Shown: positions 7,129-47,100, counted from the stretch's first letter. The stretch: DNA of 64,000 nucleotides from Macrostomum lignano (GCA_002269645.1 NIVC01000028.1:124001-188000); one strand, 5' to 3'. Numbers and translations: made by a program. Notes: generated from the sequence alone by a model not told the origin.

Positions 7129-16164
<9,036 letters not shown>

Positions 16165-16969: not shown

Positions 16970-19537
16970 CAAAAAATAGAACGAAAGCAAGTACATGAAA
17001 CCAAAAGCAGTTTGAACATTTTGCAATCTGAAAACATCCAGCAAACCGTGCTCACCCTGTGCGATATTCTCGGATTGTCTCAGTCGACGCGTTACGCAGT
17101 AGCCAGATTATGAGACATGCCCAGCTCTGAGACTGAAAACTTCCAACAGCCAAGACGCCAACTGCGAGATCACGATTTCCAGTTTGGAAGCTGAGGATTC
17201 TGAAGACACGACCGGATCGAATCAAACTCGATATGCCGTGGTGTCTTCATTGCACTCGGTAAAAGTCACCTTCACGGGCTTACCGAATTTAAGCGAGCGA
17301 TTCAGTGCAACTTTTCCCCCAGTGCTCGGTGATCTGTGCAGACTTGTATCGCAACTGATCAAAGTGACTGGAGTCAAGCAGCTCAGGATTCAAGTCGATC
17401 CAAGCACTGCTGAGCGAATACTCCAATCCTCAGTCCAACCGCAGCTGCTTGATGACGTTTCAATCAGGCACTTCCTGTCATCAGCTTTTGTGTTCTGCCA
17501 TCTACTGAGGGTTCCGGGAGAAACCCGTCTCGAGTCACTTTTGGACTTGAATGCTGGCGATGCGCTGGTGACGATCGGAGATCAGCCCCAAAGCTCGATG
17601 AGACTTGCTGTGAGTTCCTGCTTAAACGGAGAAGATGAAGCAGTCAATGAAGAGTTGGAGCACTGCATCGCTGAGAGCTCAAAGCGTTCTACGCCAGTTT
17701 ATCTGTGCATTCTATTCAACGAGATCAGCACGTGCAAATGGTACCTGAGGACCAAAAAAAGAAGTTGAATGTCAACGTAAGCGGTTGCCCAACCATGACG
17801 TGACTCGAATTCGAGTGGAATCGGATTCTGGCCTGAAAATCCGAGTTATTCTATTCGATGTTCAACAAGGAGAATGCTATCAGGACACAGGAGCTCTGCC
17901 AGCGGAACAGGTACTAAACGAGTTCAGCGATGACCAGTTCCTGCGTGAGGCGGTTTCCAAGTATGAGCAGCTGGCTCAGGAGCACTCGTTTCAGCTGGAG
18001 TGCTTCACGGTGCCCTGCCGAAACACCGCTCACATGCTGCAGGCAGCAGCAAAAGTGTAAGACAGTTTTAACAGTGCATAATTATCTGCTTACGTTAGTG
18101 CTGACGCGATGTAGCTCGTACATATCTTGATTCCGCGTCACATTTCAGAGCTCAGGAAGCCCAAAAGCAGAGCGCTGATGCAGCATCTCACGCACATGTA
18201 AGTGGTCACAGAGCAGCACAATGCTTTATTATAGTTGTTATGAAAGGCTTTCAGAACAGAATTTTAAACTGCCCCCAAAATCGCATTCTGTCTGCACGAG
18301 CTATTATTTTATGTAGAAATCAGGAAAAGGGGCGTCGACTTACGCTCATGGAACATCCTTCCTCTTGGTACTCTTGATTGCTACGGTCTTATCCAATAAT
18401 TAGCTTTTACGAGAAAATTACAATAAAGTTTTACTCTCTAAACGTTGTCATGTCAAAATTTCAAAACATTTCAGCTCTTGAGTACACCTATGTCTTTCTC
18501 TAGAGCGAAAGTAAACAGATGAATATATTCCTGTTTAACATTTCAAACTGTTGCTGGCGGTCAGATACTTGTAGCAAAACCCTAACCAGAAAAGAGAGTT
18601 GTATTGAAAATCATAAGATTTTCTGCAGTTTGAGACTGAGGAAGGAGTGTAGGGAGGGATGTTCAAGATATGAAATCTTACAGTAGCTGCCTTATAATTC
18701 AAGCGAAGTTGTACTAGCTGTAATGATCATTAACTATTGCTCAATGCTGCAGTTACTCTATGCCTGATTTACATTTGGAAAGTTAATTTCCACACGAGGC
18801 CAGAACTCTTGCATATAGCTCGAATTTTAAATGAGGCTCGTGCTGAAAACTGCCAGCCATAATAATTTCACCATAGCCAGTTAAAGTACAAAAATTTGAT
18901 ATAAATATGCTTCACAATAAACTTTACAGACTCCCGGAGCTCTGCATCATCTCGCAGCCATCGGAGATGCATCACTGCTCGCTCAAATCCTTGAAGCCGA
19001 TCCGTCAGTGCTGCAACAACCACACAAATCGTTTCCTCATCGCACGGCCCTTCTCTGTGCCGCAGCAGCCTCAGTCGCGGACTTCTCTCAAGGCTCCGAG
19101 GCTCATGCCGAGTGTTTCGAAATCCTCATCAGCAGAGGAGCTGATCCGCAAGCTGCGGACAGCCGGAAGCACTCCGTCTGGCACTGCGCCGTCCTCTCCA
19201 ACAACATTCCTCTGCTAAACACTTTGCTGGCGAACCACAGGGCAGACATCAACAGCGCAGATGGAAGCTGCATGACGCCGTTGCTGCTGGCAGTAGAAGA
19301 GGAGAATGCTCCGGTAGCAGAGATGTTGTTGGACAACGGGGCCAACTCTCAGCTCACTGACAAGGCCGGTCAGTCTGCCCTGACCATGGCTGTTTCTGCT
19401 GGAAACCTGGAGCTGGTGAAGATTGTTCTGAAGCATGAGCCGGAGATTCTGCGTGACAGCGGCGCTGTGAAATACGCCAGCATCTACTGGTCTGCGTGGA
19501 AGCAGGGCTACGATGACATCTGCTTGCATCTTCTGCA
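16970..19537 (+). CDS. Ankyrin-repeat gene, unit 2 (tandem duplicate of unit-1 exons 1-3); two frameshifts as assembled
   Basis: Exons 16970-18056, 18149-18197 and 18930-19537 are homologous to 7129-8214, 8301-8340 and 13344-13951. Frameshifts at ~17108 and ~17757 (A7 run). No ATG; starts at a phase-0 acceptor compatible with exon 16119-16164. Confidence 0.7.
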
Positions 19538-20173
19538 GTGAGTAGAAATTTGAGAAGATCTGCAACAGCTGTTAAACTGCCAAATTTGAATTTTTGTAGA
19601 GCAAAAAGTAGCACGAACTTAGAATATTTTTGGTTCATTTTCACAGTAAAAAGTTATTATACTCGTAGGTTTAACTAATAAGTAATAATTTAGCTTGTAC
19701 AACGTAATTTTTCAGAAAGCTACGAGTTGTTTTTCTTTTATAATTCTAAGTCTACATTAAGTCTACATTATTTTTTGTTCGGGTATTTTTGTTCGGGCGT
19801 CAAGTAAAGTAAATAAGATAAACAAACTAATTAGAGTTTAACACCAAACACAAGCAAGTGGGGCGCAGGGCTCAACCGGGTATATTAATGTCATTAAACT
19901 AGAGGGGGTAAAGTGAAGATAAGAAAAAGAGGGGTGATGTTGGTGTGCAAGGCAAGAGGCGAGATTGAGGAGCCAATCAGAAGGCAGCGAGTGAGAGAGA
20001 GATAGATAAGAATAACAAGACTGAACTAGACAGAGAGGGAGAGAGAAAACAGTAAACAAGATACAAGTGCTGATGAACTAAGAAATGACTAATAAAATTG
20101 CGACAACCAAACTACCAGATTATAAAGATTGTCAATAAGATTCCAATTGATTTTAACTGTCACCTTTAAACAG

Positions 20174-20395
20174 GAGCCGCGAGTGCCAACACCCGACGAA
20201 AAGGCGCGCATCTGGCCGCCGTACAGCGAGCAGATGGAGCAGTTGGGCGACTACCGCAAGCCGGTACACAAGACCGTGTACACTCTAGCTAAGCGAGCTG
20301 ACACACCGCTGCTCAATTGGCATGTTGTGCTCAAGCCAGAGCTGCCGCACGACTACAATGATTCGCCCGACTTCGACTACAAGCTAAAAGAGTAG
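20174..20395 (+). CDS. Orphan terminal (or trans-spliced single) exon, 73 codons
   Basis: Acceptor aaacag| at 20173, open frame EPRVPTPDEK...DFDYKLKE*, GC-rich third codon positions, AATAAA at 20518. Confidence 0.55.
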   Translation, partial: EPRVPTPDEKARIWPPYSEQMEQLGDYRKPVHKTVYTLAKRADTPLLNWHVVLKPELPHDYNDSPDFDYKLKE

Positions 20396-20741
20396 TTGTT
20401 GTCAAACTTTAAGCCACCACTAACTTAGCGACTTTATAAGAAACAAATTGAGTCGGATGAATTAGTAGAGTTCATTTGACATGTGCATTTTGCTGTCACT
20501 TGGCCCCGAATGTTATTAATAAATGCATACTAATAACAAAGCAACGCGTCTATGTTGCTTTAGTAGCTGCTTTTCGTGTTATTAATTTATAAATTTCTCA
20601 TAGCTATCGGTCGTGTTAAGAAATTAGCAGCGGAAAATATTGCATGTTGTTCGGATGTCATTTTGTTATAAGTAAAATATTGTATATTATTTTACTATTC
20701 TTTAATATACTGTTGTCTAATATCTTGGCACTCACTCCCAG

Positions 20742-23700
20742 GCTGACGCAGAAGAGGCAGCAGCAAGCCTTCAGCCAACCCGCAGTCAGTCGGTTGTGCT
20801 CGTCTGCGACCCAAGCGACATCAGGCAGAGAATTCAGGCTGTTCTTGATTCCGAATCCTGCTATGTCGTTGGGACTCAATCACTTGAGGATGTCGAGAAC
20901 TCTGATAGACTCATTCTGGTTGTGTCGAAAGGACGGTCTTACCAATTTATCGACCATTTTGAGCGTCTTCTCGAGGTAATTGGTTTTGATTATCGTGTGT
21001 TTTTTGGAGTACTCAACATTATTCAGGCCCACACTAGTATCCCGTGTTATTATTGCGCATTCCAGCGAGCCAAAGACTGCAACAAGTGCGTCCTCATTGT
21101 CGAAGCGGAAAATCTTGCGGCAGAAAAGCTGCTAGAAAAAGTCGGACAACGCGAAGATGTCAGAAGAATATCAGCTGAGAACATGGAAGCCGAGTTGCAA
21201 ATATGGCTAAAAAAAGGTAGATAGGATTTACATGTAATTGAGTCTCAGATACTGTATGAACCGTATTGTAAGCAGCAATATTTCAGTAATTTTTATTTTC
21301 ATTTCAGACATTATCTTTGCGCTACCTGTTGGCAATACAGCAGCCAAACAGATGGATGATTTCGATTCGCTTATCAACTTCCTTCTGCACTGGGGATTTC
21401 GCTTGCGCCAACGAGATCTAATTCGCTTTGAATGGAATGACATTTCCGACAAAATGGCTGAGTGTGACAAAGTGATCGTTGTGTACTTCAAGCCACCAGG
21501 AGAAATCTCGAGCCACGCTCGCGGTCATCTGTACCAGATGGCTTTTGACAGGATGATTGCTCTGAGAAAGCCAGTCATGTACATCGTCAAGATGTACGCT
21601 GCCTCTGATGGATCTGACGGAGACACCGTGCTTAAAAACCACCGCATTCAGAGCTTTGTCCGTGCAGTTGGGCCCTGCAGTTTGGGCAAAATTCAAGAAG
21701 ATGTCAAAGCGTGGCTGACTAAAGAGACAGCTCTAGAAGTAAGCAAAAGTATGGTATTTGGGAGCCTTGGAAATGGTCTTGCTTGGCAGTATGCCACAGG
21801 TTTCTTGGCATATATTTTGCCTAATATCGGCAAGGTTTTGAGAGACCAAGTAACTGAGAGAAATCCTAATGACACTAGCCTCTTAAAAGCAGAATTGCTC
21901 GATCAATGTGGTCTTGGCAGCATTGATCAAAACAAAATATTCGTTTTGAAGAAGTACTTTGTGCTACTGAAGGAGGACGACATCGACAGTGACAGTCATG
22001 TGAAGCCAAATCCGGAGAGTCTTTCTGCTTCATGTTGCAAGATTCAACGCACACTGAGTGAACAGCCTATAACATTAGAGTTTGAAAGTCCAGGTTATTC
22101 CAAAACAATTCCTCTCTACCTTGTCAAATTTGGTGAAGAATTGAATATCCCTCAGTTTGAGCGCTACAGCCACGCAATAATCTTGGGAGGCTTCGCCCCT
22201 CCAGTCACAGTCATTCGCGAGCTTCGAGGAATAAAAGATTTAGATGTTTCAGAAGAAATGCTGCATAATGCCTACAAGCTCTTCAAGGAAGAGTTGCAGT
22301 TCATTTTGAACCACCCCAAAGCAAACGAGCTGCTTGCAAAATTCGGTTCTGTAGACGTCCTGCCTGACAAGTCTGCGAACAAGTCTGACAAAGCAGCTTG
22401 TATTGTTGAGCGTAAGAAGGGGGAGTCTGAGGATAACTGGGATAAACTCTTTCTTTCCCGCATCAAGGAGGAAATTTTTAATGATCGCCGCAATGAACCT
22501 ATCCGATCGATTGATAATCATCATCAAGTGGACAGTGACGTTTTAGTTGTCAAGTTTTCAAGGTCAGTCGAAGAGCTTCACGATGCTGTCGTCGAAAGGC
22601 TCGAGCAAGAAGAAGGCTTTCGTGTAGAAAATTTCCAGCTGTTAAACCACACGTTTGCCGAAGTTCTCGTCAAATGCCGGCGAATGATTTTGTTTGCATC
22701 TCTCCAAGACTTGGAGTGTTTCAACAAGGATTACAGCAGCTTTGACTACAGTGATAAAAAGCACAACCACTTGCTTCGAGACATGACATCAGCTGTGACT
22801 TACGTAAGTTTTCGTTTCTATAAGTGATAACGTTTCATCGTTTTATCATATAAAACTAATTGGTCAATTTCAGATTCACATGCGTCAGGAGTACAATCTG
22901 GTGGTCGTTGTCATCACCCAAAATGTCAATAAAGACATCTACAGCGTCCTACCGTCTTCATTGCAAATTCTTCCTGAGAATAATGTTGTGTCCATCCTAA
23001 ATCTAACAAACGACAGATTAGACAATATTCAGTTTGCTTTCTCCAAGGGCGAATCAAGGCATTGTTCATTCCACGAATTAATTGAACGTCTAAGTAAGGT
23101 TTTTTTGAGTACTTTTAAGTTTCTCTATTAATTAGTGAAACTTGGTCATAATGTTTTATAAGTATTTTACTGTCTACAATTGACAATTTTAGATCTTAGA
23201 GATCCTACTATCGGGGTCGATGAAAACCTTCCTCTGATGTCCATGGCTTATTCAATGGCTGCAAACTCCTGCTTTGGATTTGTTCATCATTTGGTTCAAC
23301 GTAAGTCTTAGTTTGTCGGCGGCAGTTGCAGCTACGGTACTGTGGCTCACCACCATATCAGTTACACTCCAATTCGGTGCGTGAAAATGATTTTTTAACA
23401 AAATTGCCTGAATCTTTACCCAGGTGAACAAGCCGGCAGACTGCCGTTCAAGCTGCCTTACAAGTACGTTGTACCACGCAGTGCGCGGTATCCTGAGTAT
23501 TCCGAACTGCAAGAGCAGCTCAGTAAGCTGGGAATCACTTTGAAGAAAGACAAGTTTCAAAGCGAGGGCAGAGAATATCAGTTCTGCTTGTACACTAGGA
23601 AGTTAAACTCGCGAGAGCTAAGCGTGGCCTTTGAGGTGCCGCTGTGCGTGCTGAACCTTCGCAAGCAAGCCAAGAGCGGCTTCGGAGGCGTGCGTCGGAC

Positions 23701-23923
23701 GAGACTGAAGCAGAATCTTGACGAGTACATCATGGCATTCAAGACCATGCTTGAGTGCATGGACTGGCAGAAATTCGTTCAAGTGCTGGTCTGGCCTGAC
23801 GACAAATTTCCTGTCGACACTTGGCGCCATCCGACGCGCGAGTACGCAGAGAGCCTGCTGGACCTCGTATTCGCTGATGTCGAAGCTGAACATGCCGATG
23901 TGGCAAATCTTCGCTTGGAGTAA
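20742..23923 (+). CDS. TIR-like x3 / STING cyclic-dinucleotide-binding domain x2 protein (TM-less tandem TIR-STING), ~932 aa
   Basis: Exons 20742-21216, 21308-22803, 22874-23093, 23193-23300 and 23424-23923 splice in frame (2799 nt, no internal stop). STING signatures: GNGLAWQYATGFLAYILP (cf. human HGLAWSYYIGYLRLILP) and, in copy 2, MAYSMAANSCFGF, GREYQFCLY, VAFEVPL, GFGGVRRTRLKQ. TIR-like motifs: DVENSDRLILVVS, WGFRLRQRD...ECDKVIVVY, RLEQEEGFRV...KCRRMILFAS. Confidence 0.8.
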
Positions 23924-27852: not shown

Positions 27853-28484
27853 TCCTGCGAGAAATTCTCATAGACCCGATAAATGATCGTGTTTTGTAAT
27901 CTTGGCTCTCTCACCTCCTCCATCTACAGACGAAGTACAATAGCATCATCCGTTTAAAACCTTCATGCCGTCCAATGGCTCAGGATTTCTCAAGCGGTTG
28001 ACGCTGAAGCATGGAGCCATCTGCAAGTCTGCAGGTCCGTGTTGCTGACTTGCGAACCAGTCTGCTCTAGATCGAAATTTCGATGGTCTAATAATCTGCA
28101 ACAAATTGATGGGGCATTGCGACAAACTTCCACAAGTATTGCTGCATGTCTTAATGCATGATAACTTTAGGATGGGCTGATTTTCTATAACGGTAAAGAA
28201 ACTCTCAGAGTAGGGGTGGTAAGTTTTAATATTTTGGGTGTCCTTTTGCTTCCTTGAGGGGATGAGCAAGTGGCGAGTTCCAAATCTATACAGAACCACC
28301 AGAAATATAATTTAAGTTCGATCTATACGTACCGGACTTTCAGGTAGCAAGCAAGCAGTGCAGCGCCATCAATTTTGGCCTCTCATTGACGTTTCTCGGC
28401 AGCGTATCCGTTTCAAATTATCAGGACAATGTGCTGGTGTCAAAACAACATCACGGTCGATCATTCATTTGTACCAGTCCAAGT

Positions 28485-28825
28485 GAGCTTGGAGTCAGTT
28501 TGAAGAAAACTCGAACAGATATTACAGTTTCTGTTGTTACACACCAAAGGCAAATTTGCGCGGAGAGCTAAGCGTGGCTTTTGATGTGCCGGTGTGCGTG
28601 CTGAACCTTCGCGGGCAAGCCAATAGCTGCGTTGGAAACGTGTGTCGGACGAGGCTGAAGCAGAACCTTGACGAGTACATCATGGAATTCAAGACTATGC
28701 TGGAGTGCATGGACTGGCAGAACTTCGTTCAAGTGCTGGACTGGTCTGACGACAAGTTTCCTGTCGACACTTGGCGCCATCCCACGCGCGAGAGGGCCTT
28801 CATGACCTCGTCTTTGCTGAGATTC
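28485..28825 (+). pseudogene. Decayed copy of the last (STING CBD2) exon of the TIR-STING gene
   Basis: ELSVAFDVPVCVLNLRGQ...RTRLKQNLDEYIMEFKTMLECMDWQNFVQVLDWSDDKFPVDTWRHPTRE aligns with 23610-23835. There is a frameshift upstream and a 7-nt deletion near 28792, after which EGLHDLVFAEI matches ESLLDLVFADV. Confidence 0.85.
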
Positions 28826-29049
28826 TACACCCAGAATTCCATAGTGTTCCGGGTGAAAAATTCCGGAAAATCCAACCGGAACAGCTTTCCTTTTCCCGAA
28901 ATTGTACCGGATCATATTCCCGGATCTTTTTCCGGAAAAAGGGGCTGTTCCGGGCAAGAAAGCTAATCCGGGCGTTCACCCGGAAATCAATTAAAAAGCG
29001 GGCCCGGATCACAAAATTCTGGATAAAATTCCGGGTGAAAAGTTCGACG

Positions 29050-29725
29050 GGCAGGTGGCAGGCAGCTGCAGCAGGTCAGGTGGCAGGCAGCTGCAGCAGG
29101 TCAGGTGGCAGGCAGATGCAGCAGGTCAGGTGGCAGGCAGATGCAGCAGGTCAGGTGGCAGGCAGATGCAGCAGGTCAGGTGGCAGGCAGATGCAGCAGG
29201 TCAGGTGGCAGGCAGATGCAGCAGGTCAGGTGGCAGGCAGCTGCAGCAGGTCAGGTGGCAGGCAGCTGCAGCAGGTCAGGTGGCAGGCAGATGCAGCAGG
29301 TCAGGTGGCAGGCAGATGCAGCAGGTCAGGTGGCAGGCAGATGCAGCAGGTCAGGTGGCAGGCAGATGCAGCAGGTCAGGTGGCAGGCAGATGCAGCAGG
29401 TCAGGTGGCAGGCAGATGCAGCAGGTCAGGTGGCAGGCAGATGCAGCAGGTCAGGTGGCAGGCAGATGCAGCAGGTCAGGTGGCAGGCAGATGCAGCAGG
29501 TCAGGTGGCAGGCAGATGCAGCAGGTCAGGTGGCAGGCAGATGCAGCAGGTCAGGTGGCAGGCAGATGCAGCAGGTCAGGTGGCAGGCAGATGCAGCAGG
29601 TCAGGTGGCAGGCAGCTGCAGCAGGTCAGGTGGCAGGCAGATGCAGCAGGTCAGGTGGCAGGCAGCTGCAGCAGGTCAGGTGGCAGGCAGATGCAGCAGG
29701 TCAGGTGGCAGGCAGATGCAGCAGG
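29050..29725. repeat. 25-bp minisatellite (GCAGGTCAGGTGGCAGGCAGATGCA) x ~27
   Basis: Tandem copies, preceded by a CCGG/TTCCGG-rich low-complexity tract at 28840-29045. Confidence 0.95.
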
Positions 29726-34500: not shown

Positions 34501-37500
34501 ACGCAGGCTGACGAGCCAGAAGTAGTCAGGCGCGAACGAGCAGAGCAGGCCGAAGTAGGCCATGAGGCAGAGGCTGAGGGCGAACACGCTCCAGCGACCT
34601 CGCTTGTCTGACACGGCGCCCCAGCCAGGAGCTCCGAGCAGCATCCCAGCGAACACCACAGTGGTGATGCCGGCCACCTCGGTTGACGTCAGGCGCCAGT
34701 CGCAGCGGAGCGCGGGGCCCAGCACTGACAGCAGCAGCATCTCCATTGCGTCCGCTGCCTGCATTGAAATTGCAAAATGCCAGCTGCACTACTGACAGTC
34801 CGTGCGGCAGTAGCAATGTGCGAATATCGAGGCAATACTTGTGACATGGGATCAGAGAGCAGTGCTCAAATGGGATCAGAGAGCAGTGCTCAAATGGGAT
34901 CAGAGAGCAGTGCTCAAATGGGATCAGAGAGCAGTGCTCAAATGGGATCACAGAGCAGTGCTCAAATGGGATCAGAGAGCAGTGCTCAAATGGGATCACA
35001 GAGCAGTGCTCAAATGGCATCAGAGAGCAGTGCTCAAATGGGATCAGAGAGCAGTGCTCAAATGGGATCAGAGAGCAGTGCTCAAATGGGATCAGAGAGC
35101 AGTGCTCAAATGGCATCAGAGAGCAGTGCTCAACTGGGATCAGAGAGCAGTGCTCATATGGGATCAGAGAGCAGTGCTCAAATGGGATCAGAGAGCAGTG
35201 CTCAAATGGGATCAGAGAGCAGTGCTCAAATGGGATCAGAGAGCAGTACTCAAATGGGATCACAGAGCAGTGCTCAAGACTCCGCAAAAGCAGCAACCTA
35301 CAGACATGATGCCGGTGATGCAGAGGATTTTAATCTGGAACCTGCCGAACCCCAGCTTCTCAACCGCCTCCTCCACGGTGTACCGAACCTGCCGCTCGCC
35401 CTGAGAACTGTCGCTGCCTGCAGCAGCTGATGCAGCACCGGATGCTGAGCCAGAACTCAGCAGAACTCTGGCATCTGAAATCGAGAAGAGTGCATCAATG
35501 CAAATCGAGCTGTCAATCAAAATGACGCGCCAAGTTGAATGAGAAAATGCAAGGCACCCTGTTGAGTTGCTGAGTAGCTTTTTGAGCTTGCTGCGGCGGC
35601 TGCCAGACTCTGTCTACTAGAAGAAGAATAAGAGCTGCCGCGCTGCATTGCTGCAGCTGAGCAGTCAGTCAGCGCTCGGGCAGTTGAGGCAGGAATTGCT
35701 GAGGGTAGATTTCTGAGCAGCGCTGCTCAGGCCTCTGATAAATAAAATTTGACACGGCTGACTTGGCGCTGCCGCTTCCGGCTCAAGGAGCAGCGGGAGG
35801 AGAGGCGGCAGGGAGGGCTGGGGAGGGGATTTGAAGTGTGGGAAATTCCGGTGGGAGCGGACCGAGGCTGCTTCACCAGCGATTTAGCCTTGAAATGGGA
35901 TTTGTGGTCGGTGGGAATTCTGTGCAGTGGGGATCTAAGGGGAGTCAATGAGGATCAGGGATGGTGAATGAGGATCAGGGAGCGTGAATGAGAATCAGGG
36001 AGAGTAAATGAGGATCAGGGAGGGTGAATGAGAATCAGGGAGGGTGAATGAGGATCAGGGAGGGTGAATGAGAATCAGGGAGGGTGAATGAGAATCAGGG
36101 AGGGTGAATGAGGATCAGGGAGGGTGAATTAGAATCAGGGAGGGTGAATGGGGATCAGGGATGGTGAATGGGGATCAGGGATGATGAATGAGAATCAGGG
36201 AGGGTGAATGAGAATCAAAGAGGGTGAATGGGGATCAGGGAGGGTGAATGGGGATCAGGGAGGGTGAATGAGGATCAGGGAGAGTGAATGAGGGTCAGGG
36301 AGCGTGAATGAGGATCAGGGATGGTGAATGAGGATCAGGGAGCGTGAATGAGGATCAGGGATGGTGAATGAGGATCAAGGAGAGTGAATGAGAATCAGAG
36401 AGGGTGAATTGGGATCAGGGAGCGTGAGTGAGGATCAGGGAGGGTGAATGAGAATCAAAGAGGGTGATTGAGAATCAGAGGGTGAATTGGGATCAGAGAG
36501 GATGAATGGGGATCAAAGCCACAAAGTCCCCAAGGATCAGGTGACTCAGAGCCACCCCGGGCCAAATGCCTCAAGCAGCTGCAAGCACGACAGCACGCGA
36601 CCTACTTTTGGCTCGCGCCCGCGCGGCAGGGGAGGCGGCGACGATGAGCGACGGCGTAGCGGTGGCGACCCGAGGCTGCCGGCGAGGAGATGCAGCCCTG
36701 CTGAGATCACCTGGAAATGTTTGGCAGGAGCAGAAATGCTCTGAAACATTTGGCAGAAGCAGAAATGCCCTGAAACATTTAGCAGAAGCAGAAATGCCCT
36801 GAAACATTTGGCAGAAGCAGAAATGCCCTGAAACATTTAGCAGAACCAGAAATGCCCTGAAACATTTGGCAGAAGCAGAAATGCCCTGAAACATTTGGCA
36901 GAAGCAGAAATGCTCTGAAACATTTGGCAGGAGCAGAAATGCCCTAAAACATTTGGCAGAAGCAGAAATGCCCTGAAACATTTAGCAGAAGCAGAAATGC
37001 CCTAAAACATTTAGCAGAAGCAGAAATGCCCTAAAACATTTGGCAGAAGCAGAAATGCCCTGAAGCATTTGGCAGAAGCAGAAATGCCCTGAAACATTTA
37101 GCAGAAGCAGAAATGCTCTGAAACATTTGGCAGAAGCAGAAATGCCCTGAAACATTTGGCAGAAGCAGAAATGCCCTGAAACATTTGGCAGAAGCAGAAA
37201 TGCCCTGAAACATTTAGCAGAAGCAGAAATGCTCTGAAACATTTGGCAGAAGCAGAAATGCCCTGAAACATTTGGCAGAAGCAGAAATGCCCTGAAACAT
37301 TTGGCAGAAGCAGAAATGCCCTGAAACATTTGGCAGAAGCAGAAATGCCCTGAAACATTTGGCAGAAGCAGAAATTCCCTGAAACATTTGGCAGAACCAG
37401 AAATGCCCTGAAACATTTGGCAGAAGCAGAAATTCCCTGAAACATTTAGCAGAAGCAGAAATGCCCTGAAACATTTGGCAGAAGCAGAAATGTCCTAAAA

Positions 37501-38257
37501 CATTGGCAGAAGCAGAAATGCCCTGAAACATTTGGCAGAAGCAGAAATGCCCTGAAACATTTAGCAGAAGCAGAAATGCCCTGAAACATTTGGCAGAAGC
37601 AGAAATGCTCTGAAACATTTGGCAGAAGCAGAAATGCCCTGAAACATTTGGCAGAAGCAGAAATGCCCTGAAACATTTAGCAGAAGCAGAAATGCCCTGA
37701 AACATTTGGCAGAAGCAGAAATGCCCTGAAACATTTGGCAGAAGCAGAAATGCCCTGAAACATTTGGCAGAAGCAGAAATGCCCTGAAACATTTGGCAAA
37801 AGCAGAAATGCCCTGAAACATTTGGCAGAAGCAGAAATGCCCTGAAACATTTGGCAGAATCAGAGACCCTGCTCAGATCCCTGGCAGAAGCAGAAACAAC
37901 AAGCAGCCAAGAAGGAACACCCGCTGCTTTTCTCTACCCCTCTGCCCGCCCCAAAAATTTCTGCTCCCAGGCAATAAAAGCAGCAGAACCAGCCGATAAG
38001 CCGAAAAGATCGCTAATCAATACTGCACTGCTTTTTGAGAACAATCCGAGGCGCTGAGACCATAGCGGCCGAGTAGCTCAGTTGGTTAGAGCGTCGTGCT
38101 GATAACGCGAAGGTCGAGGGTTCGAGCCCCTCCCCGGCCAGGCAATTTTTTGTATTTTCTGCCCGATTAATTTTTCTGAGTACAGAAACTCACCATCTGC
38201 ATCCAGCGAGTCATCTTCCAGCCTGTAGCGACTGCGCCTGATGAAGCTGACAGACAT
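31571..38257 (-). CDS. SVOP: SVOP-like (synaptic vesicle 2-related) MFS transporter, ~574 aa
   Basis: Exons 38257-38194, 35474-35302, 34758-34273, 33871-33737, 33023-32553 and 31966-31571 splice in frame (1725 nt). Motifs: [66 protein letters not shown] possible alternative first exon is 35648-35558. Confidence 0.88.
33043..33730. repeat. Compound (TCAG)n microsatellite with TCACCCACTCACTCAAG interruptions
   Basis: Fills almost the whole SVOP-like intron 33736-33024. Confidence 0.95.
33890..34272. repeat. ~40-41-bp minisatellite containing the exon end and the 5' splice site
   Basis: About 10 copies of (minus strand) ctcacgctggggGTGAGTagcctgagctgcatctgtgtgtg. Confidence 0.9.
34845..35278. 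repeat. 24-bp minisatellite (GGGATCAGAGAGCAGTGCTCAAAT) x ~18
   Basis: Intronic; contains the palindrome GAGCA-G-TGCTC. Confidence 0.95.
35940..36510. repeat. 20-bp minisatellite (GAATGAGGATCAGGGAGGGT)
   Basis: Tandem, moderately diverged copies. Confidence 0.9.
36715..37860. repeat. 29-bp minisatellite (GCAGAAGCAGAAATGCCCTGAAACATTTG) x ~39
   Basis: Tandem copies; the overlapping ORFs are artefacts. Confidence 0.95.
38067..38140 (+). tRNA. tRNA-Ile, anticodon GAT
   Basis: 74-nt cloverleaf: GGCCGAG/CCCGGCC acceptor stem (one A-C mismatch), D arm GCTC/GAGC, anticodon arm TCGTG-CTGATAA-CGCGA, T arm GAGGG-TTCGAGC-CCCTC, discriminator A. T6 Pol III terminator at 38146-38151. Confidence 0.88.
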
Positions 38258-41854: not shown

Positions 41855-43635
41855 AGATGGGAGGAGAAGAAAGAGAGGAAGAGAGAGAGGGGAAGAGGGG
41901 AAGAGGAGAGGGGAAGAGGGGAAGAGGAGAGGGGAAGAGGAGAGGGGGAGAGGGGAAGAGATGAAAGGGGAAGAGGAAAGGGGAAGAGGAGAGGGGAAGA
42001 GGAGAGTGGGAGAGGGGAAGAGGGGAAGAGGAGAGGGGAAGAGGGGAAGAGGAGAGGGGAGAGGGGAAGAGGTGAAAGGGAAGAGGAAAGGGGAAGAGGA
42101 GAGGGGAAGAGGAGAGGGGAAGAGGAGAGGGGAAGAGGAGAGGGGAAGAGGAGAGGGGGAGAGGGGAAGAGGGGAAGAGGAGAGGGGAAGAGGGGAAGAG
42201 GAGAGGGGAAGAGGGGAAGAGGAGAGTGGGAGAGGGGAAGAGGGGAAGAGGGGAAGAAGAAAGGGGAAGAGGAAAGGGGAAGAGGAGAGGGGAAGAGAGG
42301 AAGAGGAGAGGGGAAGAGGGGAAGAGGGGAAGAGGGGAAGAGGAGAGTGGGAGAGGGGAAGAGGGGAAGAGGAGAGGGGAAGAGGGGAAGAGGAGAGGGG
42401 AAGAGGGGAAGAGGAGAGGGGAAGAGGGGAAGAGGAGAGTGGGAGAGGGGAAGAGGGGAAGAGGGGAAGAAGAAAGGGGAAGAGGAGAGGGGAAGAGGGA
42501 AGAGGAGAGGGGAAGAGGGGAAGAGGGGAAGAGGGGAAGAGGAGAGTGGGAGAGGGGAAGAGGGGAAGAGGGGAAGAAGAAAGGGGAAGAGGAAAGGGGA
42601 AGAGGAGAGGGGAAGAGGGGAAGAGGAGAGGGGAAGAGGGGAAGAGGAGAGGGGAAGAGGGGAAGAGGAGAGGGGAAGAGGGGAAGAGGGGAAGAGGAGA
42701 GTGGGAGAGGGGAAGAGGGGAAGAAGAAAGGGGAAGAGGAGAGGGGAAGAGGGGAAGAGGAGAGGGGAAGAGGAGAGGGGGAGAGGGGAAGAGATGAAAG
42801 GGGAAGAGGAAAGGGGAAGAGGAGAGGGGAAGAGGAGAGTGGGAGAGGGGAAGAGGGGAAGAGGAGAGGGGAAGAGGGGAAGAGGAGAGGGGGAGAGGGG
42901 AAGAGGTGAAAGGGGAAGAGGAAAGGGGAAGAGGAGAGGGGAAGAGGAGAGGGGAAGAGGAGAGGGGAAGAGGAGAGGGGAAGAGGAGAGGGGGAGAGGG
43001 GAAGAGGGGAAGAGGAGAGGGGAAGAGGGGAAGAGGAGAGGGGAAGAGGGGAAGAGGAGAGTGGGAGAGGGAAGAGGGAAGAGGGAAGAAGAAAGGGAAG
43101 AGGAAAGGGGAAGAGGAGAGGGGAAGAGAGGAAGAGGAGAGGGGAAGAGGGGAAGAGGGGAAGAGGGGAAGAGGAGAGTGGGAGAGGGGAAGAGGGGAAG
43201 AGGAGAGGGGAAGAGGGGAAGAGGAGAGGGGAAGAGGGGAAGAGGAGAGGGGAAGAGGGGAAGAGGAGAGTGGGAGAGGGGAAGAGGGGAAGAGGGGAAG
43301 AAGAAAGGGGAAGAGGAGAGGGGAAGAGGGGAAGAGGAGAGGGGAAGAGGGGAAGAGGGGAAGAGGGGAAGAGGAGAGTGGGAGAGGGGAAGAGGGGAAG
43401 AGGGGAAGAAGAAAGGGGAAGAGGAAAGGGGAAGAGGAGAGGGGAAGAGGGGAAGAGGAGAGGGGAAGAGGGGAAGAGGAGAGGGGAAGAGGGGAAGAGG
43501 AGAGGGGAAGAGGGGAAGAGGGGAAGAGGAGAGTGGGAGAGGGGAAGAGGGGAAGAAGAAAGGGGAAGAGGAGAGGGGAAGAGGAGAGAGGGGAAGAGGG
43601 GAAGAGAGACAGAGAGGGAGAGGGGAGGGGCAGGG
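41855..43635. repeat. ~1.8-kb polypurine tract (GAGGGGAA / GAGGA units)
   Basis: Almost exclusively A/G on the plus strand; the long ORFs in all frames are artefacts. Confidence 0.95.
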
Positions 43636-44172
43636 AGAAAAGACGAGGTATCAACGTAAATCTCGGAGACCTGCGCTGCCAAAAGATGAGCAAACGAAAA
43701 GAAAAAAAACACGAAAAACAAAATGAAAAGAAGAAAAACTATAAAAGATGAAATATTAAATTAGTAAGTTAATAAGCTCGCTTTGCTGTTGACATAACTT
43801 CCAAAAAAATTAGTTTAAACTATATAAACATACGCTAAACATGACAGTGTATGTGTTGTGTCTGTCTGTGTGGACTGTCCGCTACACACCTTCGCGCTGT
43901 GAGTTTCTACAGACACTGCATGCCATGTGGCAGCAGCAGCAACAGGTAAAGAACGGTTCTACAATACAAGTATGAAAACTGTGAACAATAGCAGACATAA
44001 TAGCGGTTGACACACGAGTTGAAAATCCAGCATTTGGGCATTTATAATTGTGTATAGATTATATATAATAATATAAATATAAAATCAGCATTGGTAATAA
44101 TAAAAAACAGCTTTGTACAGTCAAGGACAGAAAGCGAAGCTCGATTTCAGGTGAAACTATTCGGTAATTTTA

Positions 44173-47100
44173 TTAAACCTCTTCTGCTCCTGCTGACTGA
44201 GGCGGTGGCGACATCGGCTTGACAACCTCGGCCTCGATTTTGACTCCCGCAGAATGCACCTCTCGGGAGCAGCTCTCGGCTTCATCCTGATAGTCGCCAT
44301 AGTCTTCTTCATCAACTATGCCAGCCTCTGCAGCAGCCGTGGCCGCCGCCTCAGCCTCCCGGCTCTCGCTGGCGAAATCCGCAGAGTCGCACTGCTCAAA
44401 ACCAGCCTCAGCATCTTCCTCAGCCTCATCACCGTCGTCTCCATCATCATCGGAGTCATCATCGTCTAGCTGGTCCTCATCAGCTTCAGCATCTCTGATG
44501 AGGCGGCTGTCCAAGGGCCGGAATTTCTTCCTTGGCGGCTGCAGCTCAGGCTGGTCCTGATGAAGCTGCTGATGCTGGAGCTGGTGCAGCTGGTGCTGGT
44601 GCAGCTGGTGCATGAGCACCGCCGCTCCGACGCCAGAAGCGGCCATCGCGCCGCCGCCAGCGCCACCGAGAGCCGTCGCCGCAGTTGCCCCATCGTCAGA
44701 GTCGGGCGCGAACTTCACGCATTTCTTTTTCCGTTTGCAGGGCTTGCACCACAGCTCCTGCCGGTCCAGTCCGTACACCGCCCGGCACTTCTTGGCCGAT
44801 GCGCCCAGGTTCTTGGCGTCGCCGTCCAGACCGAGGCCCAGCTTCTTTTTCTTCTTCTTTCTCGACGCGCCGCCGTAGTTTTCTCTGGCCGACCAGTTCG
44901 GGTAGAGCTTGGAGTGCAGCTCCTTCTCTTTGCGGGCCAGCTCGTAGTATTTGGCCTGCTCATCCCGACTCAGCGAGTGCCACTTCCTGCCCAGGATCTG
45001 GTTGATCGCCGCAGACTCTTTCAGGGTGCACTCGGCCACCACCACGGGTCGCTGCTCCTTCATGAAGATCATGAAAGCGTTTAGCGGCTTCTTCACGTGA
45101 TTGGTTGGCTTGGAAGTGGGGCCGCCGCCGCCTCGACCTGCTGCGGCACTGCGGTACTGCGACTGCTGCTGGCTGGCAACTGGAGACAGCAGCCGGTTGC
45201 TTGGCGGTAAAGCCATCGAATGCTGCTGCGCCTGCGGCTGTGGATGCTGCTGTTGATGATGAGGCTGATAATGCCCATGGCCGCCGTTGCTGAGGGGACT
45301 GGAGACCGCTGCGGGGTTGTGCTGCTGGTGCGAACGGCCTGCGGTGCGGAATTGGGAGGGTTGGGGTTCAGTTTAGTTAGGGATCCTCGGTGGCTGGTCC
45401 AGCCTCCCATATCCTCAGTAGCTGGGCCAGCCTCCCAGATCCTCAGTTGCTGGTCCAGCCTCCCAGATCCTCAGTAGCTGGGCCAGCCTCCCAGATCCTC
45501 AGTTGCTGGTCCAGCCTCCCAGATCCTCAGTAGCTGGGCCAGCCTCCCAGATCCTCAGTTGCTGGGCCAGCCTCCCAGATCCTCAGTTGCTGGTCCAGCC
45601 TCCCAGATCCTCAGTAGCTGGGTCAGCCTCCCAGATCCTTAGTTGCTGGGCCACCAGCCTCCCAGATCCTCAGTTGCTGGGCCAGCCTCCCAGATCCTCA
45701 GTTGCTGGGCCAGCCTCCCAGATCCTCAGTTGCTGGGCCAGACTCCCAGATCCTCAGTTGCTGGGCCAGCCTCCCATAACCTGAGCTGCTGGGTCAGCCT
45801 CCCAGCTACTCAGACTGAGACACCCTCCCAGATCCCTAGACACTCCCAGAACGCAGAGCAAATAAACGCCTTTCTCGTTGGGCCCAAATTCCAGCTTATT
45901 AAAAAACACTTCACATTAACCATATTGAACCCAAGGCAATTAGGGTGTGAAGAAAGCGCACTCTCATATGCTCAATTCTAAGTTGCAGACCGACTCAAAG
46001 CCATCATTTAGTCGCTTAAAAAGCATCCCAGCAACAACAGGGTAATAATCAATCAATACTTCTATCAACTGATCCATTGTGCTCAACCTGAATAGTAGAC
46101 CTTCTATTAGACAGTATTTAAAGCTAAATGTTTTCAAATATCCGCACACGTGGAGCGACTCAATTATGGTCCGCCTCGCGCTCTAATAAAACACAGTGCG
46201 TGCTCGAGCACACCCCCATTCCCACCAGCCTGTTAGCAACACCTCAGGAGACTCGAGCGCACTTGTTGTTCAACCCAGCCTGTAGGCTGACACGCAACGC
46301 ACCCAGTGCATCGAAATCGATGGGCTATCAATCTGGCGGGGATCTGTCTATCTAGATCGCAGACCGTCGCCGTTCCCACGTTCATCTTGGCACCAGGTAA
46401 ATAGCATTGAGAGACAAAGCAGCACAAAGAGGCTGGATGGATGGAAAAATCAACACGCGTTTTATAAAATATAAAACTGACTTAAAGATTCGCTCATTGA
46501 TAACAGGCGAAAGAAATCAATGGAGTTGCAAAGCGAAAACTATGGGTGGAGCACCAATACGCCAAGAGCGAAGCACAGCGGGGTTGGCACGCATGCAATC
46601 TATTTTTTATATTTCTAATTATAATCAAACTGAACCTCAGTCACTTTTGTCTTTTTGCAATCGACGGTTAATGGATGAGATGCTTACATGCAACTGACTG
46701 AATTTCTGAGTCAGGAATTCTCTGAGCAGCTGAGCACCTGAATGCTGAGGTGTCCCATCAGACCTTAGACAGACACAAATAACAGCTGAGCACCTGAATG
46801 CTCAGGTGTCCCATCAGACCTTAGACAGACACAAATAACAGCTGAGCACCTGAATGCTCAGGTGTCCCATCAGACCTTAGACAGACACAAATAAAAGCTG
46901 AGCACCTGAATGCTGAGGTGTCCCATCAGACCTTAGACAGACACAAATAACAGCTGAGCACCTGAATGCTGAGGTGTCCCATCAGACCTTAGACAGACAC
47001 AAATAACAGCTGAGCACCTGAATGCTGAGGTGTCCCATCAGACCTTAGACAGACACAAATAACAGCTGAGCACCTGAATGCTCAGGTGTCCCATCAGACC

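What the first reader, a model, noticed from the sequence alone, without database searches (positions are those of the whole stretch)
20742..23923. Single-chain double-STING receptor: TIR-TIR-STING-TIR-STING with no transmembrane segment
Seen: five exons splice into an uninterrupted ~932-aa ORF with two separate STING ligand-binding-domain signatures (GLAWQYATGFLAYILP at ~21775-21822; MAYSMAANSCFGF...GREYQFCLY...FEVPL...GFGGVRRTRL at 23240-23710), three alpha/beta TIR-like units, and no hydrophobic TM block. Established: STING binds cyclic dinucleotides at the interface of two CBDs from separate chains; TM-less TIR-STING fusions with one CBD are known in bacterial CBASS and in some molluscs and annelids. 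Inference: two CBDs in one chain could build an intramolecular pocket or a pre-linked filament unit that drives TIR clustering. I do not recall this architecture being described, but I could not search.
Basis: partly seen in the sequence, partly recalled or inferred. Interest (0 to 1): 0.92.

Follow-up and report, generated by a model that had tools for sequence, protein, structure and literature searches.

The report
Flatworm soluble protein with two STING domains
This is a real, intact gene of the flatworm Macrostomum lignano (or a very close relative) for a membrane-free immune-receptor-like protein that carries two very different STING-type domains in one chain, an arrangement so far only noted in passing in oyster annotations and not described in flatworms, a phylum reported to have lost STING.

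Summary
The gene is real, with corrections. It has six exons, not five (20742-23923, + strand), and encodes 902 aa. There is no ATG. Exon 1 starts at an AG acceptor 346 bp after the MRP-S34 stop, and the M. lignano spliced leader ends in ATG, in frame.

The exon model, mapped onto a 93-94% identical M. lignano locus, translates exactly to the annotated paralog. No TM segment exists.

- **STING domain 1:** a true STING homolog by profile comparison (hhalign E about 2e-5 to 6e-5, z about 10 against shuffles).
- **STING domain 2:** only marginal sequence similarity, but the paralog's AlphaFold model is confident there. Foldseek gives 190 PDB hits; all 50 listed are STING, led by oyster TIR-STING (E 9e-10).
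- **The three alpha/beta units:** only "TIR-like". There is no Pfam TIR hit and structural support is moderate to weak.

All homologs found are M. lignano proteins, in three subfamilies that all keep both STING domains. [quoted passage not shown] I therefore rate this a new variant of a known kind. The intramolecular-pocket idea could not be tested here.

The parts
20129..20395 (+). Last coding exon of the upstream gene MRP-S34. Its stop is at 20393-20395 and an AATAAA lies at 20518. It is the probable upstream cistron of an operon-like unit.
   Evidence: ORF translation. It matches the N-terminal part of the fused UniProt model P0003, which carries PF16053. The same gene order is seen at the M. 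lignano paralog locus L001. The poly(A) signal comes.
20740..20741 (+). AG acceptor directly in front of the ORF. It is the proposed spliced-leader trans-splice site. The SL ends in ATG, which would give M-ADAEE... in frame.
   Evidence: Sequence. Upstream in frame there are only stops. The paralog gene model starts at the homologous base and is flagged 'partial'. The SL sequence is given in PMC8629364. The flatworm SL 3' AUG can serve as an initiator (PMC12582326). This part is inferred, not shown.
20742..20975 (+). Exon 1 (aa 1-78): the N-terminal tail and the first half of alpha/beta unit 1.
   Evidence: GT donor at 20976. The exon maps onto L001 with AG/GT kept, and the mapped CDS translates exactly to P0001.
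21066..21216 (+). Exon 2 (aa 79-128): the second half of alpha/beta unit 1, a flavodoxin-like 5x beta-alpha unit. An alternative acceptor at 21027 would add 13 aa.
   Evidence: Junction ERLLE|RAKDC as in P0001 and P0002. Secondary structure of the paralog model. Weak Pfam FleQ/receiver hit, E 0.04.
21308..21735 (+). Alpha/beta unit 2 ('TIR-like 2', aa 129-271), the first part of exon 3.
   Evidence: Beta-alpha repeats at pLDDT about 50-57 in model 2. The weak Foldseek hits (E 3e-3 to 0.2) are enriched in TIR-APAZ, oyster TIR-STING, plant and animal TIRs and DNPH1. No Pfam TIR hit.
21736..22482 (+). STING-like domain 1 (S1, aa 272-520). It carries the canonical alpha1 motif GLAWQYATGFLAYILP at 21775-21822.
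   Evidence: Pfam STING_LBD E 0.007 for the window protein and 0.001 for P0001, both below the gathering score. A PDB profile search gave 69 hits; all 60 listed are STING. hhalign against a deuterostome STING alignment gave E 6e-5 to 2e-5 over about 140 columns, z about 10 against shuffles.
22483..23089 (+). Alpha/beta unit 3 ('TIR-like 3', aa 521-699). It is encoded by the end of exon 3 (to 22803) and by exon 4 (22874-23093), and is interrupted by intron 3 (22804-22873).
   Evidence: Paralog model pLDDT about 46-65. Whole-chain Foldseek alignments to oyster TIR-STING 6wt7 (392 columns, E 9.4e-10) and bacterial TIR-STING 9lmq (E 3.9e-8) score better than alignments to the STING domain alone. 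No sequence-level TIR signal.
23090..23923 (+). STING-like domain 2 (S2, aa 700-902) plus the stop codon. It is encoded by the last bases of exon 4, exon 5 (23193-23300, the alpha1 helix MAYSMAANSCFGF) and exon 6 (23424-23923).
   Evidence: pLDDT is 65-86 across nearly all 10-residue blocks of residues 751-910 in the model of paralog P0001 (one block at 53), with the STING order of helices and strands. Foldseek gave 190 PDB hits with E <= 1e-3; all 50 listed are STING, and LBD-only targets give TM-score 0.52-0.64. hhalign gave a collinear 143-column alignment, E 0.03-0.07.
28482..28820 (+). Orphan fragment of the last exon (the C-terminal half of S2), about 75% aa identity. Probable pseudogene remnant of a further copy.
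   Evidence: tblastn of the spliced protein against the window. ORF 28556-28966. The same fragment is present at the paralog locus L001.

Best explanation
**What it is (well supported).**
- The gene is intact and lies downstream of MRP-S34. It probably receives its start codon from the spliced leader.
- It belongs to a STING-related family found so far only in Macrostomum lignano.
- The 902-aa product is soluble.
- Its order of units is: alpha/beta unit, TIR-like unit, STING domain 1, TIR-like unit, STING domain 2.
- S1 keeps the canonical alpha1 helix motif. In the alignment it has lost the lid arginines (human R232 becomes S, R238 becomes T).
- S2 has lost the alpha1 motif. It keeps the equivalents of R238, Y240 and E260, and an aromatic residue at Y167. 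These positions are invariant across the three subfamilies.

**How it most likely works (inferred).**
- It is a cytosolic receptor for a cyclic dinucleotide made by one of the M. lignano cGAS-like receptors.
- The two diverged STING domains of one chain pair with each other. They form one asymmetric, pseudo-dimeric pocket in place of the usual symmetric homodimer pocket.
- Ligand-induced closure then drives side-by-side oligomerisation. This clusters the TIR-like units for downstream signalling, either NAD+ cleavage or adaptor scaffolding.

**Rough likelihoods.**
- Two STING-fold domains in one chain: about 0.8.
- Cyclic-dinucleotide sensing: about 0.5.
- Intra-chain S1:S2 pairing: about 0.35.
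- The confidence value of 0.45 is for the explanation taken as a whole.
For: **Gene model.**
- The exon model is identical to the annotated paralog.
- Synteny with MRP-S34 is kept at the paralog locus.
- The SL ends in ATG.
- All four CDS indels against the paralog are multiples of 3, and there are no stops. This holds although non-synonymous divergence (0.030) equals intron divergence (0.032).

**S1.**
- hhalign E 2e-5 to 6e-5, z about 10 against shuffles.
- All 60 listed PDB profile hits are STING.

**S2.**
- The confident AlphaFold region gives 190 Foldseek hits with E <= 1e-3; all 50 listed are STING.
- Foldseek sequence identity to human STING is 10-14%. This fits the 13% of the S2 alignment, not the 26% of the S1 alignment.
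- The S1-only model gave no strong STING hits. The strong hits of model 1 therefore come from S2.

**Both domains are maintained.**
- Both are conserved in three subfamilies that share 28-34% identity.
- One subfamily has S1 joined to S2 by only about 20 residues.

**Complementary retention of residues.** Read from the alignments and the invariant columns.

**A ligand source exists.** Five M. lignano cGLRs are listed in the screen of Li et al. (PMC9980059, supplementary file 3).

**Mechanistic precedent.** Oyster TIR-STING has been solved bound to 2'3'-cGAMP (PDB 6wt7). Bacterial TIR-STING forms ligand-induced filaments that activate the TIR NADase (PMC9402430).
Against: - No ligand, oligomer or expression data exist for this protein.
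- S2 has no significant sequence match to STING.
- S1 could not be modelled with confidence (pLDDT about 25-45).
- No TIR sequence signature was found, and no catalytic glutamate can be assigned.
- The residue mapping in the S1 lid depends on an uncertain alignment register. An invariant lysine sits next to the R238 position.
- Inter-domain packing could not be examined.
- The window copy and its paralog differ by 64 non-synonymous and 11 synonymous changes. Relaxed constraint would also produce this pattern.
Confidence: 0.45

Rival explanations
1. Same protein, different pairing. Each STING domain dimerises with its own kind in a second chain (S1:S1' and S2:S2'). This gives a parallel dimer with two separate pockets, possibly with different ligand specificities, or with S1 as a ligand-dead structural dimeriser.
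For: All solved STING receptors are homodimers, which is established knowledge; the hits are such structures. S2 alone keeps the R238, Y240, E260 and Y167-type residues needed for a symmetric pocket. In the window-type protein a whole alpha/beta unit separates S1 from S2.
Against: In the alignment, an S1:S1' pocket would lack both lid arginines. Yet S1 is conserved in all three subfamilies. The P0005 subfamily joins S1 to S2 by a short linker, which favours intra-chain contact. The high local concentration of the two domains in one chain also favours intra-chain contact.
Confidence: 0.3
2. The window copy is a decaying or neofunctionalised paralog that no longer senses nucleotides. The STING folds would be structural relics in a rapidly evolving multi-copy family.
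For: pN (0.030) is about equal to intron divergence (0.032) and exceeds pS (0.019). In S2 there are 18 non-synonymous changes against 1 synonymous. A pseudogene fragment of the same exon lies 4.5 kb downstream. Canonical contact residues are partly lost in both domains.
Against: The ORF of 902 codons is intact. All four indels are in frame, and all ten cis splice sites plus the 5' acceptor are conserved against the paralog. Many positions are invariant across subfamilies that share only about 30% identity. Five of the S2 replacements fall in the 23-residue lid hairpin. That pattern looks more like diversifying selection on a contact surface than like decay.
Confidence: 0.12
3. The alpha/beta units are not TIR domains but other flavodoxin-like modules (receiver-like, or nucleoside 2-deoxyribosyltransferase/DNPH1-like). 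Output would then not be TIR-type signalling.
For: No TIR, TIR_2 or SEFIR hit in Pfam and nothing in PADLOC or NCBIfam. The units show no detectable similarity to each other. Model 2 hits DNPH1 and flavodoxins about as well as TIRs. Unit 1 has a weak receiver-like hit.
Against: Whole-chain alignments to oyster and bacterial TIR-STING score better than alignments to STING alone. TIR-containing chains are frequent among the weak hits of model 2. The position directly N-terminal to each STING domain matches the known TIR-STING layout.
Confidence: 0.3
4. Gene-model artefact: two neighbouring genes (alpha/beta-alpha/beta-STING and alpha/beta-STING) have been wrongly joined.
For: Only in-silico splicing was done for the window. 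P0003 shows that automatic models at this locus can be wrong, since it is fused to MRP-S34.
Against: Exon 3 is one 1496-nt open frame that covers unit 2, all of S1 and the first half of unit 3. The remaining introns are 70-123 nt with conserved GT/AG and matching phases. There is no stop or plausible start between the halves. The NCBI paralog models have the same structure, and a subfamily has S1 abutting S2.
Confidence: 0.03

Closest known systems
Crassostrea gigas TIR-STING (PDB 6WT6/6WT7), a soluble metazoan TIR-STING fusion solved bound to 2'3'-cGAMP
   Same: No TM segment, and a TIR-type alpha/beta domain directly N-terminal to a STING domain. It is the best structural match of the paralog model (E 9.4e-10 over 392 columns). 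It is also the best PDB sequence hit of the window protein.
   Different: The oyster protein has one TIR and one STING domain (CgSTING is 396 aa), and it is recognisable as TIR plus STING by sequence-based domain tools (SMART). The flatworm protein has two STING domains that are unrecognisably different from each other, three alpha/beta units with no TIR sequence signal, and only 14-15% identity.
[quoted passage not shown]
   Same: The tandem TIR-STING-TIR-STING idea in one TM-less chain of a lophotrochozoan.
   Different: It is known only from a sentence and a table in an annotation survey. No sequences were available to me, so neither orthology nor the degree of divergence between the two oyster STING domains could be tested. 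The flatworm family has an extra N-terminal unit and a subfamily without the middle unit. Its two STING domains are strongly asymmetric.
Bacterial CBASS TIR-STING (Sphingobacterium faecium SfSTING; PDB 9LMQ is a TIR-STING/c-di-GMP complex)
   Same: The same two-domain module by fold (E 3.9e-8). It provides the only worked-out mechanism for such a module: ligand-induced filaments activate the TIR NADase (PMC9402430; summarised).
   Different: The window gene is eukaryotic and intron-containing, sits next to MRP-S34, and has no CD-NTase operon. No PADLOC hit was found. The module is duplicated in tandem, and the catalytic glutamate cannot be identified.
Canonical metazoan transmembrane STING (TMEM173, Pfam PF15009 plus PF23417)
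   Same: S1 aligns over about 140 columns of the ligand-binding domain, with the G-L-A-W-x-Y-x-x-G-[YF]-L-x-x-x-L-P helix nearly intact. S2 has the same fold.
   Different: There are no TM helices and no C-terminal TBK1/IRF3-recruiting tail. Pfam scores are below the gathering threshold. There are two ligand-binding-type domains per chain.

Membership tests
STING ligand-binding domain (Pfam PF15009) | Score above the Pfam gathering threshold (27 bits) | tested here: not met
   S1 scores 16.2 bits (E 0.007) in the window protein and 18.7 bits (E 0.0011) in P0001, on the alpha1 helix only. S2 gives no hit.
STING ligand-binding domain (Pfam PF15009) | Homology of S1 to bona fide STING domains at profile-profile level | tested here: met
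   hhalign of the S1 family alignment against 18 deuterostome STINGs gave E 6.1e-5 (2.2e-5 after cropping) over 138-141 columns, score 40. Shuffles gave 14.2 +/- 2.5, max 23.1. All 60 listed PDB profile hits are STING.
STING ligand-binding domain (Pfam PF15009) | Homology of S2 to bona fide STING domains at sequence level | tested here: inconclusive
   hhalign gave E 0.03-0.07, score 20.1, and 2 of 150 shuffles were as high. The alignment is collinear over the whole domain. phmmer and hmmsearch against PDB sequences found nothing.
STING ligand-binding domain (Pfam PF15009) | STING alpha/beta fold | tested here: met
   This holds for S2, tested on the 89%-identical paralog P0001. pLDDT is 65-86 across nearly all of residues 751-910. 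Foldseek gave 190 hits with E <= 1e-3; all 50 listed are STING, and LBD-only targets give TM-score 0.52-0.64. For S1 the fold test is inconclusive because the models have pLDDT below 50.
STING ligand-binding domain (Pfam PF15009) | Conserved cyclic-dinucleotide contact residues (human S162, Y167, R232, R238, Y240, E260, T263) | tested here: inconclusive
   By the hhalign alignments, S2 keeps R238, Y240 and E260, has F at Y167 and K at R232. S1 keeps F at Y167 but has S and T at R232 and R238, and G at E260. The register in the lid region is uncertain.
STING ligand-binding domain (Pfam PF15009) | Dimer that binds a cyclic dinucleotide at its interface | not testable with these tools
   No multimer prediction, coordinates or binding assay were available.
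TIR-STING fusion receptors (bacterial CBASS effector, oyster TIR-STING) | No transmembrane segment | tested here: met
   The maximum 19-residue Kyte-Doolittle mean is 1.15.
TIR-STING fusion receptors (bacterial CBASS effector, oyster TIR-STING) | Recognisable TIR domain N-terminal to STING (sequence level) | tested here: not met
   No TIR, TIR_2 or SEFIR hit in Pfam at E <= 10. Nothing in PADLOC or NCBIfam. No TIR among the PDB profile hits of unit 3.
TIR-STING fusion receptors (bacterial CBASS effector, oyster TIR-STING) | TIR fold N-terminal to STING (structure level) | tested here: inconclusive
   Unit 3 plus S2 aligns over 349-392 columns to 6wt7 and 9lmq, with better E-values than STING alone, but at pLDDT 46-65 and global TM-score about 0.35. 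Unit 2 gives only hits with E > 1e-3 to TIR-APAZ, 6wt6, plant TIRs and DNPH1, from a model with mean pLDDT 38.
TIR-STING fusion receptors (bacterial CBASS effector, oyster TIR-STING) | Catalytic glutamate and NADase activity; ligand-induced filament | not testable with these tools
   No reliable TIR alignment exists from which to place the residue. Biochemistry is needed.
Canonical transmembrane STING (TMEM173) | N-terminal four-helix TM domain | tested here: not met
   There is no hydrophobic block. The N-terminal 270 residues are alpha/beta units.
Oyster tandem class (two STING domains plus two TIR superfamily domains) | Two STING and at least two TIR-type domains in one TM-less chain | tested here: inconclusive
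   The architecture matches at fold level. The TIR identity is unproven, and the oyster sequences could not be retrieved for comparison.

The most novel reading that the evidence does not exclude
Macrostomum has turned the obligate STING homodimer into a single-chain pseudo-heterodimer.
- Two ligand-binding domains have diverged beyond sequence recognition.
- Each retains a complementary half of the canonical pocket, so together they build one asymmetric nucleotide-binding site per chain.
- The family has expanded and is diversifying, especially in the lid hairpins.
- All this occurs in a phylum reported to have lost cGAS-STING.
- It would be a natural 'linked-dimer' STING with built-in asymmetry for asymmetric ligands such as 2'3'- or 3'2'-linked dinucleotides.
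Probability: 0.3. Interest if true: 0.8.

Novelty: new variant of a known kind. Interest (0 to 1): 0.6.

Why it matters
- **STING in flatworms.** STING is reported as lost in flatworms (Wu et al. 2014, based on Schistosoma). Most platyhelminths are reported to lack immune cGLRs (Li et al. 2023).
- **What this gene shows.** A free-living flatworm keeps a diversified, TM-less STING family alongside cGLRs.
- **Mechanistic interest.** Every STING mechanism known so far depends on a symmetric homodimer. A chain with two very unequal STING domains is a natural experiment on three questions:
  - how the pocket and the oligomerisation interface can be split between two different domains;
  - how TIR-type outputs are coupled to the receptor in animals;
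  - how fast such receptors evolve.
- **A practical target.** The compact subfamily (about 580 aa: alpha/beta unit, S1, S2) is a tractable target for structural and binding studies.

Tried and rejected
**Searches that added nothing**
- phmmer of S2 and of the whole protein against PDB sequences gave nothing useful for S2. The S2 family profile against PDB gave nothing either.
- hhalign of S1 against S2 and of alpha/beta unit 3 against units 1 and 2 found no detectable similarity. An internal duplication cannot be shown from sequence.
- The unit 3 profile against PDB gave no TIR.
- PADLOC and NCBIfam scans gave nothing relevant.
- A word-indexed search with the family profile found no protein beyond the three first hits.
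- The exhaustive representative search with P0001 found only M. lignano proteins. No ortholog from another species is available.

**Models and look-ups that failed**
- AlphaFold of the window's own unit 2 plus S1 gave mean pLDDT 37.9. Its Foldseek hits are too weak to count as proof.
The spliced protein could not be handed to the structure or representative tools either. The 89%-identical paralog P0001 and single-exon translations were used instead.
- The primary TIR-STING paper (Morehouse et al. 2020) is not held.

**Readings rejected**
It has GT..AG ends and the paralog models splice it out.
- Fusion with MRP-S34 as in UniProt model P0003. MRP-S34 has its own stop and poly(A) signal, and NCBI annotates it as a separate gene.
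- Upstream ankyrin exons as part of this gene. The MRP-S34 exon lies between them and exon 1.
Full report
**Observation and gene model**

The + strand between 20742 and 23923 carries a spliced open reading frame. I find six exons:
- 20742-20975
- 21066-21216
- 21308-22803
- 22874-23093
- 23193-23300
- 23424-23923 (TAA at 23921-23923)

All introns have GT..AG ends and the phases match. The product is 902 aa.

That intron is 90 nt, in frame and stop-free (ORF 20796-21224). An alternative acceptor at 21027 would add 13 aa.

I mapped the six exons onto a Macrostomum lignano locus (L001, GCA_002269645.1 contig NIVC01000001.1). Every splice site is kept there. The mapped CDS translates exactly to the NCBI protein P0001 (PAA94788.1, 'BOX15_Mlig027466g3, partial'). 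The model is therefore the same as the annotated model of a close paralog.

The window is 93-94% identical to L001 in genes and spacers alike, and the gene order is the same. It is therefore a paralogous or homeologous M. lignano segment, or comes from a very close relative.

**Missing start codon**

- In frame upstream of 20742 there are only stops.
- Exon 1 begins directly after an AG.
- The paralog model starts at the homologous base and is flagged partial.
- The last exon of MRP-S34 ends at 20395, and an AATAAA lies at 20518.
- The 35-nt M. lignano spliced leader ends in ...TTGCATG. Genes less than 1 kb apart with an SL acceptor are treated as operons in this species (PMC8629364).
- All reported flatworm spliced leaders end in ATG, which can provide a start codon (PMC12582326, citing Cheng et al. 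2006).

Trans-splicing at 20741|20742 would give ATG-GCT-GAC..., that is M-A-D-A-E-E, in frame. This is an inference, because no reads were available.

**No membrane anchor**

The highest 19-residue Kyte-Doolittle mean is 1.15, well below what TM helices give.

**Relatives**

- A word-indexed search returned only M. lignano proteins.
- An exhaustive HMMER search of 1.84 billion cluster representatives did the same.
- The relatives fall into three subfamilies that share 28-34% identity:
  - (i) the window type, about 920 aa (P0001 89% identical, P0002 84%);
  - (ii) about 710 aa (P0007): one alpha/beta unit, S1, an alpha/beta unit, S2;
  - (iii) about 580 aa (P0005, P0010): one alpha/beta unit, then S1 followed after about 20 residues by S2.
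- Both STING-like blocks have many invariant positions across all three subfamilies.
- UniProt names two family members 'Stimulator of interferon genes protein'. NCBI calls them hypothetical.

**STING domain 1 (21736-22482)**

- Pfam STING_LBD matches only the alpha1 helix and stays below threshold: E 0.007 for the window protein and 0.001 for P0001.
- A profile of the five S1 sequences hits 69 PDB sequences. All 60 listed are STING, with best E 0.013.
- Against an alignment of 18 deuterostome STINGs, hhalign gives E 6e-5 over 141 columns, running from alpha1 to alpha4.
- After cropping, the score is 40.0. The 150 column-shuffled controls gave 14.2 +/- 2.5 with a maximum of 23.1.

S1 is a diverged but genuine STING ligand-binding-type domain. 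It could not be modelled with confidence.

**STING domain 2 (23090-23920)**

- Sequence methods alone do not establish it.
- hhalign gives E 0.03-0.07, and 2 of 150 shuffles scored as high. The alignment is collinear over the whole domain.
- The AlphaFold model of P0001 is poor overall (mean pLDDT 44.8). Across residues 751-910 the 10-residue blocks score 65-86, apart from one block at 53.
- In that region the order of helices and strands is the STING order.
- Foldseek against the PDB gives 190 hits with E <= 1e-3, and all 50 listed are STING. The leaders are:
  - oyster TIR-STING 6wt7 (E 9.4e-10, 392 columns);
  - a bacterial TIR-STING (9lmq, E 3.9e-8);
  - human and anemone ligand-binding domains, with TM-scores of 0.52-0.64 normalised to the target.
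- These hits must come from S2 for two reasons.
  - The S1 region has pLDDT 25-45, and when modelled alone it gives no hit with E <= 1e-3; oyster TIR-STING 6wt6 appears only at E 0.012.
  - The reported identity to human STING (10-14%) fits the S2 alignment (13%), not the S1 alignment (26%).

**Alpha/beta units**

- None has a Pfam TIR, TIR_2 or SEFIR hit. PADLOC, NCBIfam and PDB profile searches gave nothing.
- The units show no detectable similarity to one another.
- Unit 3 is TIR-like by the whole-chain alignments to the two TIR-STING structures.
- Unit 2 gives only weak hits (E 3e-3 to 0.2), enriched in TIR-APAZ, oyster TIR-STING, plant and animal TIRs and the related DNPH1 fold. These come from a low-confidence model.
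- Unit 1 is a short five-fold beta-alpha unit with a faint receiver-like hit.

'TIR-TIR-STING-TIR-STING' is therefore better written as 'alpha/beta - TIR-like - STING - TIR-like - STING'.

**Asymmetry of the two STING domains**

S1 and S2 show no similarity to each other. The alignments to human STING give the following mapping.

| Human residue | S1 | S2 |
|---|---|---|
| alpha1 motif | kept (GLAWQY..GFL...ILP) | replaced (MAYSMAANSCFGF) |
| Y167 | F | F |
| R232 | S | K |
| R238 | T | R (in an invariant GR) |
| Y240 | aligned to a gap | Y |
| E260 | G | E |

The register in the S1 lid is uncertain, and an invariant lysine lies next to the R238 position. This complementary retention is what one would expect if the two domains of a chain pair with each other. 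It does not prove that they do.

**Selection**

- Against the paralog, the CDS has 64 non-synonymous and 11 synonymous differences (pN 0.030, pS 0.019). Introns differ by 0.032.
- S2 has 18 non-synonymous changes against 1 synonymous.
- Five replacements fall in the 23-residue lid hairpin of S2.
- A 69-nt indel and four replacements lie just before the S1 lid.
- There are no stops, all four indels are multiples of three, and all splice sites are kept.

This argues for a functional, fast-evolving gene rather than a pseudogene. The counts are too small for a formal claim of positive selection.

**Mechanism**

Shown:
- the architecture;
- the absence of a membrane anchor;
- the conservation of both STING domains.

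Inferred from established knowledge of STING and TIR-STING:
- Oyster TIR-STING has been solved bound to 2'3'-cGAMP (PDB 6wt7).
- Bacterial TIR-STING forms ligand-induced filaments that switch on the TIR NADase (PMC9402430).
- By analogy, this protein is a cytosolic cyclic-dinucleotide receptor whose ligand-induced oligomerisation clusters the TIR-like units.

A plausible ligand source exists. Five M. lignano cGLRs are listed in the screen of Li et al. (PMC9980059, supplementary file 3).

I favour intra-chain S1:S2 pairing, at about 0.35. The alternative of S1:S1' plus S2:S2' dimers is about as likely. Neither could be tested here.

**Comparison with what is known, and novelty**

- The closest solved relative is the oyster TIR-STING.
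- A tandem arrangement has been reported in passing.
- I found no description of STING in Macrostomum in the held literature.
- Earlier work reports loss of STING in flatworms and absence of immune cGLRs from most platyhelminths.
- Three features are not described in what I could read:
  - the strong asymmetry of the two domains;
  - the extra N-terminal unit;
  - the subfamily in which the two STING domains abut.
- I therefore rate it a new variant of a known kind.

**Limits**

- The structural evidence for S2 and unit 3 comes from the 89%-identical paralog, not from the window protein itself.
- The alignments used for modelling contain only eight or nine sequences from one species.
- No expression or binding data were available.

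Noticed in passing
window 28482-28820 (+): An isolated fragment of the gene's last exon (the C-terminal half of STING domain 2, about 75% aa identity) lies with no upstream exons nearby. The same fragment exists at the paralog locus L001 (16937-17178). It is probably an old pseudogene remnant of a tandem copy.
   Followed up: partly
window 20976-21065 and 21027: Intron 1 is 90 nt, in frame and free of stops, so intron retention would insert 30 aa into alpha/beta unit 1. A second AG at 21026 could serve as an alternative acceptor and add 13 aa. Whether either isoform exists is unknown.
   Followed up: partly
window 20742-23923 vs L001 10001-13244: Non-synonymous divergence (0.030) exceeds synonymous divergence (0.019) and equals intron divergence (0.032). 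S2 has 18 non-synonymous changes against 1 synonymous, with a cluster of replacements in the lid hairpin. Synonymous sites diverge less than introns, which is odd and unexplained. Gene conversion or codon constraint are possible causes.
   Followed up: partly
window 20129-20741 (+): The MRP-S34 last exon, its poly(A) signal and the acceptor of the STING-like gene lie within about 350 bp, an operon-like arrangement. The paralog's name (Mlig027466.g3) suggests it is the third gene of one transcriptional unit. A UniProt model (P0003) wrongly fuses the two genes.
   Followed up: partly
L002 (M. lignano NIVC01000486.1): Two compact family members (P0005 at 582 aa and P0009 at 605 aa) lie in tandem about 6 kb apart. 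P0002, a window-type copy, appears to be on the same contig, since the longest contig listed for it has the identical length of 454,326 bp. The family therefore looks partly clustered.
   Followed up: no
window 8824-12795 (+): Open reading frames of a Ty1/copia-type LTR retrotransposon: gag (Retrotran_gag_2), integrase (rve, gag_pre-integrs) and reverse transcriptase (RVT_2). The ORFs look largely intact.
   Followed up: no
window 13267-13963 and 18859-19549 (+): Two copies of an ankyrin-repeat exon, 95.7% identical over 697 bp and about 5.6 kb apart. This is a local segmental duplication within or next to an ankyrin-repeat gene.
   Followed up: no
window 44173-45216 (-): A 347-aa ORF with an HMG-box domain (E 1e-21), flanked by repeat arrays.
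   Followed up: no
window 26000-63700, e.g. 41861-43638, 36720-37864, 29052-29725: Very dense minisatellite content: Tandem Repeats Finder reported 39 rows with score >= 200, some of which describe the same array. It includes a 1.8-kb purine-only array (GAGGGGAAGAGGA-like) with GC skew 0.88. Many long 'ORFs' in this half of the window are repeat artefacts.
   Followed up: no
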